Shown here one piece after another: positions 5,255 through 61,492 of a stretch of DNA of 64,000 nt. The notes under the pieces are model-generated. The model was not told where the DNA came from and did not search any database. It saw only the letters and a list, made by a program, of their open reading frames with translations. Made by a program: the position numbers and the translations under genes. The DNA lies in the IMG/VR virus record IMGVR_UViG_3300046810_000338, positions 164,500-228,499 of that record. The stretch is one strand, 5' to 3'. Positions within the stretch are counted from its first letter, which is position 1, and the number at the start of each line of letters is the position of its first letter.

Positions 5255-5770
5255 GTGATGTTCAAGAAAATCTGGAGATGGATAATGGAGGAGGATGAGG
5301 ACGTAATTACCCCTCAGCCCGATCCGCTAGCAGATCGCATGACGTCGATGTTGGATGTACTTGGCCGATTTGCAAGCCTGCTAGCGCAACACCGGTGGAA
5401 AGGACGCAGGGTAACCTGGCGCACCTCCACAATAACCAGTGTCCATTCGGACATTTATAATCTAATCGATACCGTACGGAGCACCACCCATGCAGTCATG
5501 GTCAAAGGAAAACCAGAAACGACCACCCGACTCAGCCGCAGATTTGTGGACAACCTAACCACGACTACTCTCGATGGCTACCTCGTTGACGAACAAGGTA
5601 TGTCTACCGAACCGAGTGTCATTATGCAGGAGCTGATTACCGCTGTCAGGGAACTGGTCGCCAACATCAACCTGTGTAAGGAAAGCGATGCCATGAACTA
5701 TGAATGGTATCTTGCACAATGCTCAAATCTGTTTGTCGAGCTAGAGATTGTATTTAAGGCCTACCTCTAG
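5255..5770 (+). CDS. Hypothetical protein
   Basis: 171-aa ORF. Confidence 0.7.
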   Translation: MMFKKIWRWIMEEDEDVITPQPDPLADRMTSMLDVLGRFASLLAQHRWKGRRVTWRTSTITSVHSDIYNLIDTVRSTTHAVMVKGKPETTTRLSRRFVDNLTTTTLDGYLVDEQGMSTEPSVIMQELITAVRELVANINLCKESDAMNYEWYLAQCSNLFVELEIVFKAYL

Positions 5771-5796
5771 TCTCCTCAAGCTGAGGGTCTTTCTGG

Positions 5797-6489
5797 ATGA
5801 GTACACAAAGAGGGAGTGACATCTCAATTTTGTTGGCCTCTCACGACAAACGTATCCGAGAAGCGTCTGGCTTATTGAGCAGGCTGTATCGGTTAACCTT
5901 GCTTGAGCTGTCGATAACCCCGTATAAGTGGAACCTGTTGCTGACCAACTACTTGGACAATCTGGCTCACACCCAGAGTCTGTCTCAGGACAAGATTACG
6001 AACGAGCGCAACAACCTGCGTAAGGGACTGTCTGAGCCTGACATGACATTCGAGATGTTGGCCCGAGGATTAAAGGTCCTCAATCCAAAGGAGATTCATT
6101 TTGACGTGGAGTTAATGTTCCCCCAGAACGTGACACTCACAACGACGATCAACATGATCTCCCCACAGAACGGCGAACAGGGAAAGCTGACTGAGATGTA
6201 TAGCAACATCCTTGCCATGCTTGGCAAGGACGTGAACAACCTGGAACCGGAGATAGATGCCTACCTCTCCAATCCGTTGATTCGCGAAGATATAAAAGGA
6301 CGCAAGAAAGGAAACGACAAGGGCAACCTACGTCGTGAACTACCAGGCATGGCCATGACTTTTGACGTGTTCAAGAAAGGACTACGGATTCTTGCACCCG
6401 ATGAAGTAACCATGACCATCCGACTGCGGTGGAATCGCAGTCGTGTCACCAAACACAAGCTTATCATTGTTACCCCCAAGCAAGCATAA
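5797..6489 (+). CDS. Hypothetical protein with two tandem homologous domains
   Basis: NNLRKGLSEPDMTFEMLARGLKVLNP versus GNLRRELPGMAMTFDVFKKGLRILAP. Confidence 0.75.
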   Translation: MSTQRGSDISILLASHDKRIREASGLLSRLYRLTLLELSITPYKWNLLLTNYLDNLAHTQSLSQDKITNERNNLRKGLSEPDMTFEMLARGLKVLNPKEIHFDVELMFPQNVTLTTTINMISPQNGEQGKLTEMYSNILAMLGKDVNNLEPEIDAYLSNPLIREDIKGRKKGNDKGNLRRELPGMAMTFDVFKKGLRILAPDEVTMTIRLRWNRSRVTKHKLIIVTPKQA

Positions 6490-6493
6490 GTCA

Positions 6494-6527
6494 GCCCTCT
6501 CTCCAGCCTTCGGGTTGGAGAGAGGGT
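6494..6527 (+). terminator. Stem-loop with UUCG tetraloop
   Basis: GCCCTCTCTCCAGCC-TTCG-GGTTGGAGAGAGGGT; T-rich tract downstream. Confidence 0.7.
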
Positions 6528-6589
6528 CTGTTGCCCTCGGTTTATTTTTTGGCCAATCCTATAGTCCTTTTATCAGTGGAATCCTAATC

Positions 6590-7600
6590 ATGAGAACAAA
6601 CATTGCCCCGACTACGATCTACACGGGTATCGATGAAAAGCTTAAGGTTAAAGACGCCGCTGATATCACGGGCGCAACCGGTAACACCTCGGTAATCGAT
6701 GCACTGTCTGGCATGAAAGATGAGGTCGTAGATACCTTACGTAAAACACCTCAGCTGGCTTCCAGGTTGACCCAGTTGGTTCTGGATGTAAAGAATGGTC
6801 GGGCAACAGGCACCGATACCGCTTCTCGTATTGCCAGTGTCTTTAGCAACCGAGGCGGGGTGTTGGACGATCTGTCTAACAGAGCCAAAGGCGTCATGCA
6901 AGATTCGCTGGGTATGTCCCCAGCACTGGCTAACCAGGTATTCATTGCAGCCAAGGGCACTGTCCTGGCCGGTACTGCGTACTTGGGTTCTAGCCGAGAC
7001 ATCAGCAGTGCCTCAGGCGTTGCCTCGACACTGCAACGCCTGCTCAATGACAAAGACGCTATCCAGTACGTGGATCTGTCTGCTCAAGCTTCTCTGCTGT
7101 CCGGTGTGATGAACGAGGCTATCAAGTCGGGCATCCCTCAAGGCATCGACATGCTGATGAAGCAGGCGGCCACAGACGCCCAGCGTAGTGCCATTGCCAG
7201 TCAGAACTTGTACGCTGTGGTGTTCAGCGGTAACTTGGATACCGTGGAAGCTATGGTCAAGTACGTAACCCCTGAGGCTATCAAAGCTCGCTATCCAACC
7301 TTTGCTCGTGACTTCCTGGCCCAGTACACCTTGCTGGCCACCGATAACCCACTCACCTACGCTCCAGCTAAAGCCAGAATCTTGGCGCTGTTTCGACTGA
7401 TTGATCCCGTTTGGGACATTACGATGCGTAACGGTGCGCCGGTCCCCTCCCTAGCTCCGTTCGTGTCGGCCTCATCGGATGCTGTGAAAGTATTTGCAAC
7501 CTCCGATGAATACCGTAATGCAATGACCATTGCTCCTGGCTTCAAGTCAGTTGAGGCCAAGGCTTGGATTAAACAGCATTACTCGTTCTTCCCTGCTTAA
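6590..7600 (+). CDS. Putative virion structural protein
   Basis: ATG at 6590 (MRTNIAPTT...). The extended ORF-track start runs through the upstream hairpin. Function inferred from context only. Confidence 0.55.
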   Translation: MRTNIAPTTIYTGIDEKLKVKDAADITGATGNTSVIDALSGMKDEVVDTLRKTPQLASRLTQLVLDVKNGRATGTDTASRIASVFSNRGGVLDDLSNRAKGVMQDSLGMSPALANQVFIAAKGTVLAGTAYLGSSRDISSASGVASTLQRLLNDKDAIQYVDLSAQASLLSGVMNEAIKSGIPQGIDMLMKQAATDAQRSAIASQNLYAVVFSGNLDTVEAMVKYVTPEAIKARYPTFARDFLAQYTLLATDNPLTYAPAKARILALFRLIDPVWDITMRNGAPVPSLAPFVSASSDAVKVFATSDEYRNAMTIAPGFKSVEAKAWIKQHYSFFPA

Positions 7601-25992: not shown

Positions 25993-26793
25993 ATGGCCGC
26001 TAATCAAGTGCGTTACGGTTGTACGGCCCTGTTGGGCGTCAACAAAAAAGGTATCATCAAGCCAGATGCCAACGGTTACTACCCTATCACAGTTGGGGGC
26101 TTTAACGTCCACAACTACGGTGGTGCGTACTACCCGTTGGGAGAGGCGGCCAAGTTGTTCGAAGAGTCCGGCTCTTTGATGCGCCGGATCAAGGCAGGCG
26201 TTGTGCGGGCTGAGTTGGGTCATCCTCGTAAAGAGAACATGGGGCCTAACGATTTCTTCAAGCGTCTGAACGAGATCTACGAAGAAAAGGTGTGTGGTCA
26301 CTTTGCTGAGGTGTGGCTGGATTACGACAATTACAAGTCGAAGTCTGGTTTCCCGATGGTCGCCATCGTGGCACGCGTCAAGCCTTCTGGCCCGTACTGC
26401 GACACCCTCAAGATGTCGTTGGACAATCCTGAGGAAGAAACCTGCTTCTCCATTCGTGCAGCGGTTGTGCCGAAGATGGAAGGCGGTCGTGAAGTGCGCT
26501 ACGTTGAAGACATCGTGACGTGGGACTATGTGAACGAGGGTGGTATCGCCATCGCTCGCAAATACTACTCGATGGCTTTGGAGAGTATGGATGCGCGCAT
26601 GACCGACATTGCTACTGAGGACAATCTGATTGTTACTCCGGCGATGCTGGAACATGCAACTAAGGCCTCCATCCGCACCATGGGTTTGGAATCTGAAGAT
26701 ACCCAGCGTCTGAAGGACCTGGGAGAGCGTCTGGGCTGGGATCGTCCTACACGGACATCTTTCCCTACCCCAAGCTATCTGAAGTGGTCATAA
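25993..26793 (+). CDS. Prohead (head maturation) protease (phiKZ gp175-like)
   Basis: AELGHP, CFSIRA and TWDYVNEGGI motifs; C-terminal ALE/GLE candidate self-cleavage sites. Confidence 0.85.
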   Translation: MAANQVRYGCTALLGVNKKGIIKPDANGYYPITVGGFNVHNYGGAYYPLGEAAKLFEESGSLMRRIKAGVVRAELGHPRKENMGPNDFFKRLNEIYEEKVCGHFAEVWLDYDNYKSKSGFPMVAIVARVKPSGPYCDTLKMSLDNPEEETCFSIRAAVVPKMEGGREVRYVEDIVTWDYVNEGGIAIARKYYSMALESMDARMTDIATEDNLIVTPAMLEHATKASIRTMGLESEDTQRLKDLGERLGWDRPTRTSFPTPSYLKWS

Positions 26794-26799
26794 GACCTT

Positions 26800-26833
26800 G
26801 CAGGGGCTCCTAAGGGAGTCCCTGCTTTATGCC
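26800..26833 (+). terminator. Stem-loop followed by TTTATGCC
   Basis: GCAGGGGCTCC-TAAG-GGAGTCCCTGC. Confidence 0.65.
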
Positions 26834-26850
26834 ACCGGATTACTTTTTTA

Positions 26851-26871
26851 CACACCTGAAGTATCTACTTG
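26851..26871 (+). promoter_or_regulatory. Putative promoter motif, degenerate (ACCT-N11-TTG)
   Basis: CACACCTGAAGTATCTACTTG directly upstream of the small-gene array. Confidence 0.35.
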
Positions 26872-26891
26872 AACTGTATTGGAGATTTGCA

Positions 26892-27101
26892 ATGGTTAAC
26901 TACCTGTCGACTCAGTTGCAGTATGCCAACAATCATCGCCTGCAAGCGGTGAGTGTGGTAGAAGTTGAGAACATGGAAGTTCTGTATCAACGGACACTTT
27001 CGATCATTTGGATAGATGGTGTTATCCAACGTCACTACAAGGCAACTGAATCTGGGAACGGATTTGCTTGCGCTACCTTTGAAATAGGAGGATTAGAATG
27101 A
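26892..27101 (+). CDS. Small hypothetical protein (array member 1)
   Basis: GGAG RBS; ATG at 26892 (MVNYLSTQLQY). Confidence 0.6.
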   Translation: MVNYLSTQLQYANNHRLQAVSVVEVENMEVLYQRTLSIIWIDGVIQRHYKATESGNGFACATFEIGGLE

Positions 27102-27478
27102 GTAGCCTGCGCTATTGCAACACAGTCCGCCGATATGCCGGCAACTATGTTCAAGTCATTGGTAACATCACCGACATCTCTACCGTGCCTGGAAGAGAGG
27201 GTCTCGTTGCCGACATCACGGCGATGGCGATGAGTTTGGCTCCAACCGATTACAGCATGAGCGATTTCGAAACAGTCTATCGCACTGCCAGGAGCTCTCA
27301 GTTTGGGATGTGTCAAGTCGAGCGTTTCCATTACTGCGAGCAACGGGCAAGGCGGATGACCTCTGAGCGCTATCGGGAAACCAGATTAATCATGGCCGCC
27401 GGGCATAAAGACTTCGGTCGCCTGTTTGAGCCTCGTCCAATGTGGCATGAAGGCTATGCCGAAAAGATAGGATTGTAG
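27098..27478 (+). CDS. Small hypothetical protein (array member 2)
   Basis: AGGAGG RBS; ATGA overlap; MSSLRY. Confidence 0.7.
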   Translation: MSSLRYCNTVRRYAGNYVQVIGNITDISTVPGREGLVADITAMAMSLAPTDYSMSDFETVYRTARSSQFGMCQVERFHYCEQRARRMTSERYRETRLIMAAGHKDFGRLFEPRPMWHEGYAEKIGL

Positions 27479-27480
27479 TC

Positions 27481-27705
27481 GTGCGATACGAAAACCAACA
27501 AATCGTAACAGCGCTGTCAGTTAGCCAAAGTCACTGCCGCTGGGATGGTGAATACCATGACTTTGCCATCGCTACCCAGGTTAGCCTTGCAGCATACATT
27601 CGTGGCTACAAAGAAACACATTTCACCTACTCGAACAGTTCTGAACGCATTTATCTTTCCAAGACCCGAGGTGAACAGCAGACCTCCCCTGAGTACCGTT
27701 ATTAA
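27481..27705 (+). CDS. Small hypothetical protein (array member 3)
   Basis: AGGA RBS; GTG start; MRYE. Confidence 0.6.
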   Translation: MRYENQQIVTALSVSQSHCRWDGEYHDFAIATQVSLAAYIRGYKETHFTYSNSSERIYLSKTRGEQQTSPEYRY

Positions 27706-27730
27706 GAAAGTTACGGCCGAGGAAACGATT

Positions 27731-27982
27731 GTGGATAGATTGAAATATACGCACATGACCAGGCAGTATGGGGAGGGTTGGGTTCAAACAGTATTCACCA
27801 GATCTTCTGAAGAACCTAGTTGGTTGAATACCAACAGCACTCGCTGGACCACATCCGGACTTACGCTGCATCACAGCACTGTCGTTGCTGGGGTTCATCG
27901 GATTGATATAATCCATCCTCGGGCCGATGTACCTGCCCCAGTATTTAAACACTCCTGGGGCTCAGAAGAAAGTTACAGTTGA
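27731..27982 (+). CDS. Small hypothetical protein (array member 4)
   Basis: GAGGA RBS; GTG at 27731; MDRLKY. Confidence 0.6.
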   Translation: MDRLKYTHMTRQYGEGWVQTVFTRSSEEPSWLNTNSTRWTTSGLTLHHSTVVAGVHRIDIIHPRADVPAPVFKHSWGSEESYS

Positions 27983-27991
27983 GGAGGTACC

Positions 27992-28273
27992 GTGATCAAG
28001 TACAGCAATTCTCAGATGCACAAGGAGGACCATTACGACCCGCATCGAACGGAGAGCCACGCCACTCACTATCGAGGCGACAAGCCTCTACGGGACAACG
28101 TGACCATCGTTCGCCAACCCTTCTGGACAGCCCCAGCTCACTACGCCATCTACTCCCACAAGCTGCATCCGTACGGTGAGGGCGGTATTAATCGCCTGAT
28201 CGAACAGGGGCGTATTGACGACGCGGGTCGAAGTGCTACTCGACTCATGACTTTACTGAGGCCTGACGAATGA
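27992..28273 (+). CDS. Small hypothetical protein (array member 5)
   Basis: GAGGAGG RBS; GTG start; MIKY. Confidence 0.65.
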   Translation: MIKYSNSQMHKEDHYDPHRTESHATHYRGDKPLRDNVTIVRQPFWTAPAHYAIYSHKLHPYGEGGINRLIEQGRIDDAGRSATRLMTLLRPDE

Positions 28274-28530
28274 GTAACCAACGTATTCGTTACGAGTCCC
28301 ACCAGCGTCTTGGCAGAACTCGTCTGGGTAAGGAGACTTATTCTTCTTCGAGTACGGTCAGCGTTGTGACCACCGGAGAGGCCCAAATCAACTTCACCTA
28401 CCATGGTGCCGGCGACATCGCCGCTAGTGCCTATGAGCTGTTCACCAGGGACGGACCAGCTTTCCTTGGCACTACCAAAAAACAGTACAGGGAATGGATG
28501 ACTCCCTTGTCAGTTGAATTGAGGCGATAA
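28270..28530 (+). CDS. Small hypothetical protein (array member 6)
   Basis: ATGA overlap; MSNQRIRYESH. Confidence 0.65.
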   Translation: MSNQRIRYESHQRLGRTRLGKETYSSSSTVSVVTTGEAQINFTYHGAGDIAASAYELFTRDGPAFLGTTKKQYREWMTPLSVELRR

Positions 28531-28534
28531 GGTC

Positions 28535-28750
28535 ATGCTTCGATACCGTTCACATAACCGGATGTACGTTAATCATTTATCGGGGCATCAGGTTTATTCC
28601 AGCCACACGAAGGTTACTCACGACGTGGTGGTCTTTAACGAAGTCGGACGGCGTGGCGCTGTCGGATCTGGCATTCATGAAGAAACCTACTTCTCTGTAA
28701 GGGAAGGCGGTCATTTTCTGCGCGGAACCTTCTTTGGAGGCTTCAAATGA
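28535..28750 (+). CDS. Small hypothetical protein (array member 7)
   Basis: MLRYRSH; tight packing. Confidence 0.65.
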   Translation: MLRYRSHNRMYVNHLSGHQVYSSHTKVTHDVVVFNEVGRRGAVGSGIHEETYFSVREGGHFLRGTFFGGFK

Positions 28751-28998
28751 ACCTGCGATATGAATCCGTAATCCGGCTCGCTAACCGTGAGCCTGAGGAA
28801 GGTGGTCCTGTGGTTGTGGCCTCGACTACTGTTATTCATCCTGGAGGCTACGATTACAATGTTGCCTGTCGTATGAGTGAAATGGGTCAACCTCCTTTTC
28901 GTGAGAACTACTTTGCTCGCATGGGCAAAGAGCATTATCTGCGTGGTCGTGTAGTAGGCGATTTCCGTGAACGCAAGGTTAAGATTACCTTTTTCTAG
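28747..28998 (+). CDS. Small hypothetical protein (array member 8)
   Basis: GGAGG RBS; ATGA overlap; MNLRYES. Confidence 0.65.
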   Translation: MNLRYESVIRLANREPEEGGPVVVASTTVIHPGGYDYNVACRMSEMGQPPFRENYFARMGKEHYLRGRVVGDFRERKVKITFF

Positions 28999-29006
28999 GA
29001 GGAGAG

Positions 29007-29309
29007 ATGCTCAGACATCACCGACTACAAATTCGTAACGATGGTCAAACCGATACGGTCACCACCGAATTACGAATACCCGAATACCATGAATCAGGTT
29101 GGCATCCAACTAGTCTCATAGTCCATCACGTAGATAACGGGGACGTGACGGGCGAGAGATTCATCTTGTTTGGAGGTCAGTCTGTCCAAGTGTTCGTGGG
29201 TGAGGAATCGGACTGCTATGCAACCGTTAATGTTGGCGGATGTATCGTTGGTCTTCATCGAGTTGGTTCAATGATTCGGTTACCTGCCAAACGTTGGAGT
29301 CTGAAATAA
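29007..29309 (+). CDS. Small hypothetical protein (array member 9)
   Basis: AGGAGG RBS; MLRHH. Confidence 0.6.
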   Translation: MLRHHRLQIRNDGQTDTVTTELRIPEYHESGWHPTSLIVHHVDNGDVTGERFILFGGQSVQVFVGEESDCYATVNVGGCIVGLHRVGSMIRLPAKRWSLK

Positions 29310-29317
29310 AGATTGTT

Positions 29318-29338
29318 GACACCTAAATCATTCAAGTG
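29318..29338 (+). promoter_or_regulatory. Putative promoter motif ACCT-N11-GTG
   Basis: GACACCTAAATCATTCAAGTG in an AT-rich intergenic region. Confidence 0.45.
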
Positions 29339-29450
29339 GACTAGTTATTAGATTGGTTCATAAGCTTCTCATTTCACGATGAGATTTATCCTGCCAAGAC
29401 CTGGAACATGTTCTGTCCAATTCTGGCAATCGTAATCAAGGAAACATGAG

Positions 29451-29942
29451 ATGTCCATCAAAAAGAATTTGTCCACTGGTTCCGCTCTGTTGCTCAAGAA
29501 CCTGACTACCGCCATCGACGCCACTCTGGGCGGCGAGAAGCCACCGAGCGATCTGGAAGTAAGCCTGGATAACAAAACCCTGGCCGATGTTCTGGACGGC
29601 TACGTCACCACCACCGATGTCGGCGAACGCGCTGTCACTGTGGACGACCTTCAAGCGGTCGGTAACTTCCGTCGTGACTTCCAGCAGGTCACTCGCATCT
29701 ACAACGGCGACGCCGGTGTAGAGCACATGGAAGCCAACGTTGACGCCACCTCCTTCCGCACCACTGTCAATCTCGGCAACCTCGGCACCAGCGTGCAAGC
29801 GGCGTTCTTCAAGCCTGGCAAGGAAGACCAGGGCAACACCAACTTCGTGTCGATCACCGATGCCTGGGACGGCAGCGATGAAGACAAAGCCGTCGAAGCT
29901 CATCTGAAAAGCCTGAGCCAACGTCTGGTTGCGAAGAAGTAA
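29451..29942 (+). CDS. Hypothetical protein, probably highly expressed
   Basis: 163 aa; strong C-ending codon bias; own terminator. Confidence 0.75.
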   Translation: MSIKKNLSTGSALLLKNLTTAIDATLGGEKPPSDLEVSLDNKTLADVLDGYVTTTDVGERAVTVDDLQAVGNFRRDFQQVTRIYNGDAGVEHMEANVDATSFRTTVNLGNLGTSVQAAFFKPGKEDQGNTNFVSITDAWDGSDEDKAVEAHLKSLSQRLVAKK

Positions 29943-30398: not shown

Positions 30399-30422
30399 GG
30401 CCCGCCTCGCAAGAGGTGGGTC
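30399..30422 (+). terminator. Stem-loop with GCAA tetraloop, followed by ACTATGCC
   Basis: GGCCCGCCTC-GCAA-GAGGTGGGTC. Confidence 0.55.
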
Positions 30423-30448
30423 ACTATGCCCTTGAATGGAGAAACCCT

Positions 30449-31045
30449 GTGACAACGATTGCGTATCACCGAGGGCAAATGTCCTCTGACAGCCGTGTAG
30501 CAGTTCGATTGAATACGCGGGCCGAGAGCTTCGAGTTCCGTGAAAAGATCTTTCGTAGTAGCTGCGGTCGTGCTTATGCTGGTCAAGCAGGCGACAACCT
30601 CCTTCCAGAAGCCATGGAAGAGTTGGTTCAACAGTTGTTGTTGGGGATCATCGACTACGAAAAAGACCCTTCTGCGTGGACTGGTCTTAAAACCCCAGTC
30701 AAGGAAGACATCGTCGTCATGACGCAGCACTCGGCTTACCTTTTTGAACACATCAAAACCACCGTGCTCATTCCTCTTACCGATGACATGGTGGCGACCA
30801 TGGGGTCTGGTGAAGACCTGGCTAAGACGGCACTGATAGCTGGCTGTTCGCATGAACAAGCCATTGGCTACGCCTTGTTGCATGACCGCTTTTCCGGTGG
30901 CCAATGCCACGTTTACAATGCCAGTGATCTTGAGCCACTACTGCGCCTGCGTACTGCGGAGGAGATCTCGGCTGAGTTAACCAAAGCCGGCATCGAGCAC
31001 ACGATCACTTCGGTTGATGAAGCACCTGCCGGGGGTTTGGAATGA
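30449..31045 (+). CDS. HslV/proteasome-beta-like Ntn threonine peptidase
   Basis: GGAG RBS; GTG at 30449 gives the N-terminus (M)TTIAY. Also SDSR, EKIF, AGQAGD, MGSG and HDRFSGG motifs. Confidence 0.75.
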   Translation: MTTIAYHRGQMSSDSRVAVRLNTRAESFEFREKIFRSSCGRAYAGQAGDNLLPEAMEELVQQLLLGIIDYEKDPSAWTGLKTPVKEDIVVMTQHSAYLFEHIKTTVLIPLTDDMVATMGSGEDLAKTALIAGCSHEQAIGYALLHDRFSGGQCHVYNASDLEPLLRLRTAEEISAELTKAGIEHTITSVDEAPAGGLE

Positions 31046-60430: not shown

Positions 60431-61492
60431 TTATGAGCAACGCAGACGAATCTTGAGCTTATCCATGTCGGCCTTTGTCAAAGACAAACCAGCAACGTTT
60501 TTATCCGTTGAAGTCAGGCGCTGAAAAGTACCCATTGCACCCGTCATCGTTTTCGACCACGGTTTGAAGACCGTACCATCCTCAGAGAAGCTGGTCGTTG
60601 CCGTCATGGTCATGCCATTAACCGCTTTCAACCGACCCTTGGCCAACACCCCGACCACTTTGGCACTGGTCAGACTGGGGGCAGTGTAACCCACATCCAA
60701 CGTGGCCAGCTGAGCAGGCCCGCTAACAACAGGCGTGTCGATATCCGACGTACCCGTGATGGCGGTTTTCAACACCGAGTCCACTGTGCCGGTAGACGGG
60801 GTCAGGTTAGTGGCAGTGGTGGTCGCTACCGCCATGGGTGCCACCGTAATGTTGCCAGGAGGCATCAGGGTTTCCCCAGACTCGTACTCAATCCAATAAA
60901 GGTCTTTAAAGCACCATTCATAGGTCAAGTTGAGGGTTGAGGTGCGCTCGCCGTAGCCACCCATGTCTTGGTAGATAGCCGCGTTGTTGGCAACCGCGGT
61001 TGTCATCCAGGCAGGGATTGGCGTAACCGCAAGCTTTACCCCATTGACCCAACGATCGATGATTCCGTTGGGGAAGTCCAGCTTCCACGTACACCAGTAT
61101 TCAACGCCTGCTGCCAAACCAGGCAGGTCGGTGGACGAGAAGAGCTGAAGTCGGTTGACCACGTTGTCGTTGATGAAGCCCATCACCGAATCAAACCAAG
61201 ACCCAGTAGTGTTCTTCACACGAAACCCACTGTAGATGGTTCTGCCAGCCGTCAGTTGTCCAACCAGATTAGCCAGGGTGTTGTACAGCGTGATGTATGC
61301 AACGTCTGCCCCGGCAGTGCGCTTGTTGGTCAAGTGCAGGTAGCCGTTGGCATCTACCGAAGTGCCGGCTACCTGGTTACCGGAGTAGGCGTTGTCGTTT
61401 CGACGAACCCACCCAGTACCAGGCAGAGTAGTGGCCGCAGTCAGCGTGGCTGGAACCGGATAGGCCCAACCGTAGGCATCATGAATGATCAT
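60431..61492 (-). CDS. Virion structural / tail-fibre-associated beta-rich protein (family A)
   Basis: 353 aa, Thr-rich; resembles 62095..63177. Confidence 0.6.
   Translation of the reverse strand: MIIHDAYGWAYPVPATLTAATTLPGTGWVRRNDNAYSGNQVAGTSVDANGYLHLTNKRTAGADVAYITLYNTLANLVGQLTAGRTIYSGFRVKNTTGSWFDSVMGFINDNVVNRLQLFSSTDLPGLAAGVEYWCTWKLDFPNGIIDRWVNGVKLAVTPIPAWMTTAVANNAAIYQDMGGYGERTSTLNLTYEWCFKDLYWIEYESGETLMPPGNITVAPMAVATTTATNLTPSTGTVDSVLKTAITGTSDIDTPVVSGPAQLATLDVGYTAPSLTSAKVVGVLAKGRLKAVNGMTMTATTSFSEDGTVFKPWSKTMTGAMGTFQRLTSTDKNVAGLSLTKADMDKLKIRLRCS

What the first reader, a model, noticed from the sequence alone, without database searches (positions are those of the whole stretch)
26892..29309. 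Tandem array of nine tiny proteins, most sharing an N-terminal [LI][RK]Y motif
Seen: nine tightly packed ORFs of about 70-125 aa with good RBSs follow the prohead protease terminator and a promoter-like motif. Their N-termini are MVNYLSTQLQY, MSSLRY, MRYE, MDRLKY, MIKY, MSNQRIRYESH, MLRYRSH, MNLRYES and MLRHH. The remainders are highly divergent, rich in His/Thr/Tyr/Arg and look beta-strand-like. Inference: an old, fast-diversifying paralogue family in which the first strand is a shared docking or targeting signal. They could be variable adaptors, anti-defence inhibitors, or subunits that complement a common partner.
Basis: partly seen in the sequence, partly recalled or inferred. Interest (0 to 1): 0.62.

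Follow-up and report, generated by a model that had tools for sequence, protein, structure and literature searches.

The report
Fast-evolving small-protein family in jumbo phage
Nine tightly packed small genes after the head protease of an uncultivated phiKZ-like jumbo phage are real and belong to an undescribed, very fast-evolving protein family that shares an N-terminal beta-strand motif and appears to be switched on early in infection; what they do is still unknown.

Summary
There are nine same-strand ORFs of 69-126 aa at 26892-29309, each with a Shine-Dalgarno site, and each is the best of its six frames by codon usage. [LI][RK]Y lies in the first 9 residues of 6 of the 9, against 8 of 822 comparable starts in the 228.5-kb genome.

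The motif is the start of a longer element of about 13 residues, hydrophobic-R-Y-x-N-x-Q-R-R-hydrophobic-G-x-G. It is shared with 5-7-gene arrays at the same locus in at least eight related ~230-kb phage contigs.

Significant similarity links o2 and o4 (family F) and o7 and o8. o3 is a weak, borderline match to family D. o1, o5, o6 and o9 are tied in by the motif alone.

An AlphaFold2 model of o2 (pLDDT 70) places the motif in strand 1 of a five-stranded beta-meander followed by a helix. No known fold matches above background.

The array follows a phiKZ-type terminator and a 28-nt motif. That motif also precedes the nuclear-shell and non-virion RNA polymerase genes, so early transcription is likely.

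Array genes evolve far faster than their flanks: family F is 39% identical between two phages whose proteases are 97% identical.

Function is unknown. I favour host-directed early effectors. A T4-like capsid-targeting signal is disfavoured.

The parts
25993..26793 (+). Head maturation protease (Peptidase_S80); conserved left anchor of the locus
   Evidence: Pfam PF20034 E 3.6e-73 and PHROG 3014. 43% identical to the Ralstonia phage FLC1-1B/RP12 protease. 74-75% identical to the nearest metagenomic relatives.
26789..26833 (+). phiKZ-type intrinsic terminator: GC-rich hairpin followed by TTATGCC (26827-26833)
   Evidence: RNA fold -28.9 kcal/mol, z -4.0. About 30 hairpin+TTATGCC elements in the genome. 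Same architecture as the phiKZ terminator motif ...YTTATKYYGT (PMC10914365).
26847..26874 (+). 28-nt promoter-like motif TTTACACACCTGAAGTATCTACTTGAAC, inferred early (virion RNA polymerase) promoter of the cassette
   Evidence: About 20 copies in the genome, nearly all on the + strand and intergenic. Conserved in front of the arrays of L003, L004, L014, L032, L036 and L037. The same motif precedes the nuclear-shell and RNAP beta genes.
26892..27101 (+). o1, 69 aa, MVNYLSTQLQYAN...; carries the motif, no detectable relatives
   Evidence: (matrix rank 13 of 822). The Pfam DUF7574 hit is below cut-off (15.3 against 27 bits).
27098..27478 (+). o2, 126 aa, member of family F; the only member with a usable fold model
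   Evidence: F profile E 5e-8. hhalign to F 82%. AF2 pLDDT 70: strands 3-13, 17-30, 39-52, 55-67, 74-82 and helix 89-102.
27481..27705 (+). o3, 74 aa (GTG start), probable counterpart of family D in relatives (borderline match)
   Evidence: D profile top non-member hit, E 0.03. hhalign D-o3 E 6e-4 over the ERIY segment. Alignment A2.
27731..27982 (+). o4, 83 aa (GTG start), second family-F paralogue lacking the C-terminal helix
   Evidence: F profile E 1e-5. BLASTP to L030 F-type protein E 4e-9. Alignment A1.
27992..28273 (+). o5, 93 aa (GTG start), motif IKYSNSQ; orphan
   Evidence: (rank 11 of 822). No Pfam or PHROG hit.
28270..28530 (+). o6, 86 aa, motif IRYESHQRL; weakly linked to o7/o8
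   Evidence: The o7+o8 profile's top hit outside the pair is o6, E 0.24. BLASTP o6-o7 over the N-terminus.
28535..28750 (+). o7, 71 aa, paralogue of o8
   Evidence: o7-o8 BLASTP 29% over 72 aa, E 2e-3. hhalign 70 columns, E 2.4e-4.
28747..28998 (+). o8, 83 aa, paralogue of o7; ORFan outside this genome
   Evidence: Only a self-hit among 5.8 billion proteins. AF2 model failed, pLDDT 44.
29007..29309 (+). o9, 100 aa, motif LRHHRLQIRNDGQ; ORFan
   Evidence: Only a self-hit. No match in two complete relatives. Matrix rank 6 of 822.
29314..29341 (+). Second, weaker copy of the promoter-like motif, ahead of the next gene
   Evidence: Matrix score 22.6.
29360..29392 (+). Weak hairpin followed by TTATCC, a degenerate terminator-like element in the leader of the next gene
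   Evidence: Fold -14.8 kcal/mol, z -0.95, not distinguishable from shuffles.
29451..29942 (+). Conserved 163-aa protein of unknown function; right anchor of the locus
   Evidence: 54-59% identical in L003, L004, L014, L030, L032, L035 and L037. PHROG 7952, function unknown.

Best explanation
The nine ORFs form a cassette of genes for a lineage-specific, undescribed family of small (62-152 aa), mostly basic, beta-rich proteins. The family is found in a clade of ~230-kb phiKZ-like (nuclear-shell-encoding) jumbo phages from soil and rhizosphere metagenomes.

Shown: the cassette always sits between the head maturation protease and a conserved 163/164-aa gene. It holds 5-9 genes per phage, and the window's nine is the largest seen. 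It changes by tandem duplication (o2/o4, o7/o8), gain and loss, reordering and replacement by very divergent alleles. Members share an N-terminal motif, hydrophobic-R-Y-x-N-x-Q-R-R-hydrophobic-G-x-G.

Modelled: in o2 the motif forms strand 1 and the turn of a long beta-hairpin that opens a five-stranded antiparallel meander.

Inferred: the cassette is insulated from the late head genes by a phiKZ-type terminator. It is transcribed from the phage's early, virion-RNA-polymerase-type promoter, alongside the nuclear-shell and non-virion RNA polymerase genes.

Inferred, weakest step: the proteins are made in the host cytoplasm at the start of infection. They act as a diversifying set of binders against host factors (takeover or counter-defence), built on a common beta scaffold with variable surfaces.
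For: Real genes: SD sites, 9 of 9 best frame by codon usage, and dN/dS 0.19-0.35 for orthologous array genes in relatives.

Shared motif.

Paralogy and orthology: F profile hits o2 at 5e-8 and o4 at 1e-5; o7-o8; D profile hits o3 only at a borderline E 0.03.

Lineage restriction and fixed locus: an exhaustive HMMER search of 1.84 billion representatives found only about 8 true homologues. Every one whose context could be read lies in a protease-array-164-aa arrangement. More distant phiKZ-like phages have unrelated genes there.

Fold: AF2 of o2, pLDDT 70, pTM 0.57, motif in strand 1.

Early transcription: terminator (PMC10914365). A 28-nt motif with an AT-rich core occurs in about 20 intergenic copies. 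It is conserved ahead of the arrays in six relatives. It lies upstream of the nuclear shell protein (PHROG 4795) and a 710-aa RNAP beta that matches phiKZ-group phages in two pieces, like the split non-virion beta. PMC7598289 states that the bioinformatically detectable conserved motif in RNAP-encoding jumbo phages has in every tested case been the early promoter. PMC4666361 states that non-virion RNAP subunits are early genes.

Fast evolution: L036 against L037 has protease and the 240-aa protein 97% identical, but F 39%, G 48%, B 69%, D 73%. F and G have saturated synonymous sites (pS 0.78) against 0.2-0.4 in the flanks.
Against: No direct evidence of function. There are no expression data: the only sequencing run holding this DNA is the probable source rhizosphere metagenome.

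The early-promoter assignment is by analogy with phiKZ, not by mapping a transcription start.

In some relatives a family member ('A', 63 aa) lies upstream of the terminator, on the late side. Another ('H') lies about 2 kb downstream. So the family is not strictly tied to the early cassette.

Four of the nine (o1, o5, o6, o9) are joined to the family only by the short motif. A common fold is modelled for one member only.

The basic, Arg/His/Tyr-rich composition fits nucleic-acid binding as well as protein binding.
Confidence: 0.5

Rival explanations
1. T4-like internal head (ejection) proteins. The shared N-terminus would be a capsid-targeting sequence that docks the proteins to the prohead core. 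It would then be removed by the neighbouring protease, and the variable bodies would be injected with the DNA to counter host defences.
For: The array sits directly after the prohead protease in a head-gene block. The proteins are small, mostly basic and hypervariable, with only the N-terminus conserved. This matches the T4 IP and CTS logic, and the conserved N-termini of the SPN3US paralogues gp53 and gp54 (PMC5694885). In some relatives member 'A' lies upstream of the terminator and is probably co-transcribed with the protease.
Against: The cassette is separated from the protease by a strong terminator. It carries the promoter class shared with the shell and non-virion RNAP genes. There is no conserved Glu-containing cleavage site after the motif: [SAG]-x-E occurs in only 11 of 33 members, at scattered positions. 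In the o2 model the motif is an integral strand of the sheet, not a detachable propeptide.
Confidence: 0.12
2. Small nucleic-acid-binding proteins. The conserved same-face residues of strand 1 (Tyr3, Asn5, Gln7, Arg9) would form a beta-sheet surface that binds RNA or DNA. This would resemble ribbon-helix-helix repressors or ssRNA-phage coat proteins. The paralogues would recognise different targets, for example to regulate phage or host transcripts early in infection.
For: pI is 8-11.5 for most members. Arg, His and Tyr are enriched about two-fold. Conserved polar and aromatic residues alternate on one face of a strand. The o2 model is an exposed antiparallel sheet backed by one helix. Levivirus coat proteins appear among the weak fold matches at Z 4.8-4.9, which is background level.
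Against: No match to any nucleic-acid-binding family by sequence or by fold above background. Some members are acidic or neutral (o1 pI 5.2, o9 6.6). The resemblance to Arc or MetJ-type strands comes from my memory, not from a test.
Confidence: 0.15
3. The N-terminal motif is a sorting signal within the infected cell. It might direct import into, or docking on, the phage nucleus, and would be shared by otherwise unrelated cargo proteins.
For: The phage encodes a nuclear shell protein. Only the N-terminus is conserved across most members.
Against: Several members are demonstrably homologous beyond the motif, so the motif need not be an added signal. The motif is modelled as a core strand. I found no linear import signal described for these phages in the papers read, but I did not search for one specifically.
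Confidence: 0.08
4. Chance ORFs or non-functional remnants in a variable intergenic hotspot.
For: Codon-usage scores are lower than for long genes. Most members have no relatives. Single-sequence structure models are poor.
Against: The nine ORFs are contiguous and on one strand, each with an SD site. All nine are the best frame of six. The motif statistics hold. Orthologous arrays in relatives are under purifying selection.
Confidence: 0.03

Closest known systems
Bacteriophage T4 internal proteins IPI/IPII/IPIII and their capsid-targeting sequence (as summarised in PMC5694885)
   Same: Small, mostly basic proteins that vary greatly between related phages and are conserved mainly in a short N-terminal segment. 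The genes are associated with the head morphogenesis and protease system.
   Different: The T4 CTS is a 10-20-residue propeptide cut off after a Glu by the prohead protease, and the IP genes are late. Here there is no conserved cleavage site. The promoter is of the early type. The motif is modelled as part of the folded sheet. There is no sequence similarity.
Variable accessory or anti-defence gene islands of phages (for example anti-CRISPR loci beside a conserved marker gene); comparison from general knowledge
   Same: A fixed genomic slot between conserved genes is filled with a changing set of small, fast-evolving genes. Contents differ between phages whose flanking genes are nearly identical.
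   Different: Such islands usually hold unrelated proteins. Here the occupants share an N-terminal motif, and several are demonstrably paralogous. No member matches a known anti-defence protein, and no HTH regulator is adjacent.
phiKZ early transcription units and phiKZ-type intrinsic terminators (PMC7598289, PMC4666361, PMC10914365)
   Same: A hairpin followed by TTAT(G) acts as terminator. An extended conserved motif with an AT-rich core occurs upstream of the shell and non-virion RNAP genes and upstream of this cassette.
   Different: The motif sequence (CAGACCTArATTATCtAaGTGA) is specific to this phage clade. The transcription start and polymerase dependence are not mapped.
Generic long beta-meander sheets backed by a helix (actin capping protein, Aha1 N-domain, levivirus coat proteins, TULIP-like domains, segments of outer-membrane barrels)
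   Same: The o2 model has five long antiparallel strands plus one helix. These are the best fold matches (Z 4.8-7.1, TM 0.4-0.58).
   Different: All scores are at the background level the tool states for models without a true match. No single family stands out, and sequence identity is 0-12%.

Membership tests
One paralogous family containing all nine ORFs | Shared sequence motif beyond chance | tested here: met
   6 of 9 against 8 of 822 starts. 13-residue motif score 463 against 357-373 in controls. Cross-phage matrix ranks five of the nine in the top 13 of 822.
One paralogous family containing all nine ORFs | Significant similarity over most of the length between members | tested here: inconclusive
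   Met for o2/o4 (F profile 5e-8 and 1e-5) and o7/o8 (E 2e-3; hhalign 70 columns). o3-D is borderline (E 0.03). Not detectable for o1, o5, o6 and o9.
One paralogous family containing all nine ORFs | Common fold | tested here: inconclusive
   o2 model is usable (pLDDT 70). o8 model failed (pLDDT 44). ESM Atlas models of o2 and o9 have pLDDT 0.43 and 0.39. No further fold jobs were available.
T4-type capsid-targeted internal proteins | Conserved short N-terminal segment | tested here: met
T4-type capsid-targeted internal proteins | Prohead-protease cleavage site ([LI]-x-E in T4; [SAG]-x-E in phiKZ) directly after the segment | tested here: not met
   No conserved Glu column in the 14 residues after the motif. 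[SAG]-x-E occurs in 11 of 33 members at varying positions.
T4-type capsid-targeted internal proteins | Late transcription with the head genes | tested here: not met
   A strong terminator lies between protease and cassette. An early-class promoter motif lies ahead of o1. This is inference by analogy, not a mapped transcript.
T4-type capsid-targeted internal proteins | Presence in the virion | not testable with these tools
   The phage is uncultivated and no proteome exists.
phiKZ-like early transcription unit | Extended conserved motif with an AT-rich core in many intergenic copies | tested here: met
   22 matrix hits of at least 14 bits, 21 on the + strand, nearly all intergenic.
phiKZ-like early transcription unit | Same motif upstream of hallmark early genes (non-virion RNAP, nuclear shell) | tested here: met
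   The motif at genome position 61127 precedes the shell gene at 61211. The motif at 76424 precedes the RNAP beta gene at 76534.
phiKZ-like early transcription unit | Mapped 5' ends and dependence on the virion RNAP | not testable with these tools
   No RNA run holds this sequence.
phiKZ-type intrinsic terminator | GC-rich hairpin followed by TTAT | tested here: met
   Window 26789-26833, -28.9 kcal/mol, z -4.0. About 30 similar elements in the genome. Motif described in PMC10914365.
Pfam DUF7574 (o1 only) | Score above the gathering threshold | tested here: not met
   15.3 bits against a cut-off of 27.
Any Pfam, PHROG or PDB-sequence family | Significant profile match | tested here: not met
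   No hit at E below 0.01 for any of the nine. The F-family profile finds nothing among PDB sequences.

The most novel reading that the evidence does not exclude
The conserved face of the first strand (Tyr-Asn-Gln-Arg on alternate residues) is a common recognition element. Through it a diversifying set of early proteins would engage one shared partner: a nucleic acid, the nascent phage nucleus or its import machinery, or each other by strand pairing. The variable remainder would select different targets. That would make this a phage-encoded variable adaptor system, expanded to nine members here.
Probability: 0.15. Interest if true: 0.8.

Novelty: new variant of a known kind. Interest (0 to 1): 0.5.

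Why it matters
Most genes of nucleus-forming jumbo phages have no known function. Their early small proteins are where host takeover and counter-defence factors have been found.

This locus offers a defined, lineage-specific multigene family. It sits in a fixed genomic slot and has a recognisable 13-residue signature, an inferred early promoter and extreme evolutionary turnover. That pattern usually marks genes at the phage-host interface.

The signature gives a simple handle for finding further members. The fixed slot gives a clean target for deletion or swap experiments once a relative is cultured.

The by-products are also useful for annotating this clade of uncultivated soil jumbo phages. 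They are a clade-specific early-promoter consensus and phiKZ-type terminators in a phage only 43% identical (protease) to its nearest cultured relatives.

Tried and rejected
Nucleotide search against 50,697 phage records: no match.

Pfam and PHROG scans of all nine: nothing significant.

Word-index protein search with o8 and with o9: only self-hits.

o9 against two complete relatives: nothing. Three other handles were not held and so were not searched.

The exhaustive profile search also returned two long eukaryotic repeat proteins, P0009 and P0011 (Fn3- or CUB-like). I treat these as spurious summed repeat matches.

PDB sequence search with the F profile: nothing.

AF2 of o8 with a 7-row alignment: pLDDT 44, unusable.

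ESM Atlas look-ups for o2 and o9: poor models and no usable hits.

Fold searches with the o2 model in PDB (Foldseek and VIA-align wide), BFVD and the ESM Atlas: only background-level matches.

Complex prediction on an o2 homodimer: no verdict, which is neither support nor evidence against.

Sigma-70 promoter and T-tract terminator scans of the region: no more than chance.

I first read the TATG inside TTATGCC as a phiKZ late promoter. I dropped this once PMC10914365 showed that the hairpin plus TTAT is the phiKZ terminator motif. A dual role is not excluded.

Profiles of families A, B, C, G, K and E2 from relatives did not pick up any window ORF.

Sequencing-run search: only the probable source metagenome, no RNA. 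I therefore did not use read laying.

Full report
Context. The window is bases 164500-228499 of a single 228,499-bp contig. Its head maturation protease (25993-26793, Peptidase_S80) is at most 43% identical to those of cultured phiKZ-like jumbo phages of Ralstonia, Burkholderia and Xanthomonas. The genome also encodes a nuclear shell protein and split RNA polymerase subunits. The only public run that holds the region is a rhizosphere metagenome, which is probably its source.

The observation. Nine + strand ORFs fill 26892-29309 almost without gaps: o1 69 aa, o2 126, o3 74, o4 83, o5 93, o6 86, o7 71, o8 83, o9 100. Three begin with GTG, and all have a GGAG-type site upstream. In all nine the annotated frame is the best of six under the genome's codon usage. 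The scores are typical of other short genes here.

[LI][RK]Y lies within the first nine residues of six of the nine. It occurs in only eight of 822 comparable starts in the whole genome, and six of those eight are the array itself. The composition claim holds for His, Tyr and Arg, each roughly doubled. It barely holds for Thr.

Relatives. Searches with the protease found a clade with proteases 72-75% identical: IMG/VR contigs of 231 kb (L003, L004) and metagenome contigs (L011-L014, L028). An exhaustive profile search with o2, o4 and their relatives against 1.84 billion representatives found only about eight true homologues.

Look-ups of five of these homologues returned loci L030-L037, all with the same arrangement. 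A virion RNAP subunit is followed by 63-, 473- and 240-aa proteins and the protease. Then comes an array of small genes, then a conserved 164-aa protein.

Arrays in relatives hold 5-7 genes, which I call families A-G and K. The window's nine is the largest array. More distant phiKZ-like phages carry unrelated, larger genes in this slot. The family and its slot are therefore specific to one clade.

Is it one family? With the wider sampling, the family-F profile hits o2 at E 5e-8 and o4 at 1e-5, against a background of about 5,700 six-frame ORFs. o4 also matches an F-type protein of L030 at BLASTP E 4e-9. o7 and o8 align over about 70 residues. o3 is the top non-member hit of the family-D profile, but only at a borderline E of 0.03. 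o6 is the top hit of the o7+o8 profile at E 0.24. o1, o5 and o9 have no detectable relatives, and o8 and o9 are ORFans among 5.8 billion proteins.

What unites all members is the N-terminus. A Gibbs search over 33 non-redundant array proteins converged on a 13-residue motif. Position 1 is hydrophobic in 24 of 33, Y is at position 3 in 18, N or S at position 5 in 22, Q at position 7 in 26, R at position 9 in 20, and G, D or N at position 13 in 22. Its score of 463 lies far above the 357-373 reached by random sets of N-termini.

A matrix trained only on other phages ranks five of the window's nine in the top 13 of 822 starts.

Structure. With a 12-sequence alignment, AlphaFold2 models o2 at pLDDT 70, and about 80 over residues 1-100. 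The model has strands at 3-13, 17-30, 39-52, 55-67 and 74-82 and a helix at 89-102. The motif is strand 1 plus the turn of a long hairpin.

The conserved residues fall on alternate positions, and so on one face of that strand. Fold searches in PDB, BFVD and the ESM Atlas gave only background-level matches to generic long beta-meanders. The o8 model failed, so a common fold for all nine remains unproven.

Transcription signals. The protease gene ends in a strong hairpin followed by TTATGCC. About 30 such elements occur in the genome. They have the architecture reported for phiKZ terminators (PMC10914365).

Thirteen bases further on lies a 28-nt motif at 26847-26874. It recurs about 20 times, nearly always on the + strand and in intergenic DNA. 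It is conserved in front of the arrays of six relatives. Elsewhere in this genome it precedes the nuclear shell gene, a 710-aa RNAP beta gene and a DNA polymerase operon. That RNAP beta matches phiKZ-group phages in two pieces, as the split non-virion beta does.

The reviews read here state two relevant things. The one bioinformatically detectable conserved motif in such phages has always proved to be the early promoter of the virion polymerase (PMC7598289). Non-virion RNAP genes are early (PMC4666361). I therefore infer that the cassette is early. A weaker copy of the motif at 29314-29341 precedes the next gene.

Evolution. Between L036 and L037 the flanking genes are 97% identical, with dN/dS 0.05-0.15 and pS 0.2-0.4. 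Array families B, C and D have dN/dS 0.19-0.35. Families F and G are 39% and 48% identical, with saturated synonymous sites. So the genes are under purifying selection and are therefore coding, but they are much less constrained than their flanks.

At the right end of the array, whole alleles have been exchanged for very divergent ones. Gene order also differs: F precedes D in the window and follows it in relatives.

Interpretation. The secure part is descriptive. This is a real, clade-specific multigene family with a conserved N-terminal hairpin. It sits in a fixed slot, turns over extremely fast, and probably has early expression.

For function I favour host-directed early effectors for takeover or counter-defence. 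The grounds are timing, turnover and small size. This step is inference only.

The attractive T4 analogy, internal proteins with a capsid-targeting sequence next to the protease (PMC5694885), is weakened on three counts. There is a terminator and an early-type promoter. There is no conserved cleavage site. The motif is modelled as an integral strand.

Two caveats apply. In some relatives member A lies on the protease side of the terminator. Another member, H, lies outside the cassette.

A nucleic-acid-binding role fits the basic, Arg/Tyr-rich composition and the same-face Tyr-Asn-Gln-Arg pattern. It has no support from family or fold matches. A homodimer test of o2 gave no verdict.

Novelty. 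No Pfam, PHROG or PDB family covers these proteins, and the fold has no clear counterpart. The general phenomenon is familiar, however: a hypervariable slot of small early genes. I rate it a new variant of a known kind, of moderate interest.

Noticed in passing
whole genome; in the window e.g. 26789-26833, 56824, 60423 (+), 35795 and 46530 (-): About 30 GC-rich hairpins are followed directly by TTATGCC. Many sit inside a longer palindrome, GGCATAA-hairpin-TTATGCC. This is the same architecture as the phiKZ intrinsic terminator motif, in a phage only distantly related to phiKZ.
   Followed up: partly
genome positions 12999, 16285, 30324, 34232, 43220, 44016, 50534, 59285, 61127, 71404, 76424, 112262, 118346, 145166, 145463; window 5162, 26847, 29314, 49277, 49320: A 28-nt motif, atTTCAGACCTArATTATCtAaGTGA, occurs nearly always on the + strand and in intergenic DNA. 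It lies upstream of the nuclear shell, RNAP beta and DNA polymerase genes. It is probably the early-promoter consensus of this phage clade.
   Followed up: partly
L036 vs L037 (array genes 5298-6595): Families F and G have saturated synonymous divergence (pS 0.78), while the adjacent protease has pS 0.31 and 97% amino-acid identity. The right end of the array has been replaced by very divergent alleles, not merely mutated.
   Followed up: partly
L003 8799-8990; L004 8804-8995; L013 459-650: A 63-aa family member ('A') sits between the protease stop codon and the terminator. It is therefore on the late-transcript side. The window phage has no counterpart at that position.
   Followed up: no
L003 12784-13077; L004 12299-12592: A 97-aa protein ('H', MMILRTNVQQ...) carries the same N-terminal motif and lies about 2 kb downstream of the array. 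No equivalent was found in the window genome.
   Followed up: no
L032 4385-4703: A gap without a called gene encodes a D-like peptide (..LFGDPPAWLAE..). This is probably a missed or degraded array member.
   Followed up: no
window 26829-27101: An alternative ATG at 26829, inside the TTATGCC of the terminator, would extend o1 to 90 aa and add a second LKY at residues 10-12. It lies upstream of the promoter-like motif and has no good SD site, so I kept the 26892 start.
   Followed up: partly
window 30416-31045: A 209-aa protein downstream of the array matches the PHROG 'peptidase HslV family' (E 3e-18). It is a second protease-like gene near the head protease.
   Followed up: no
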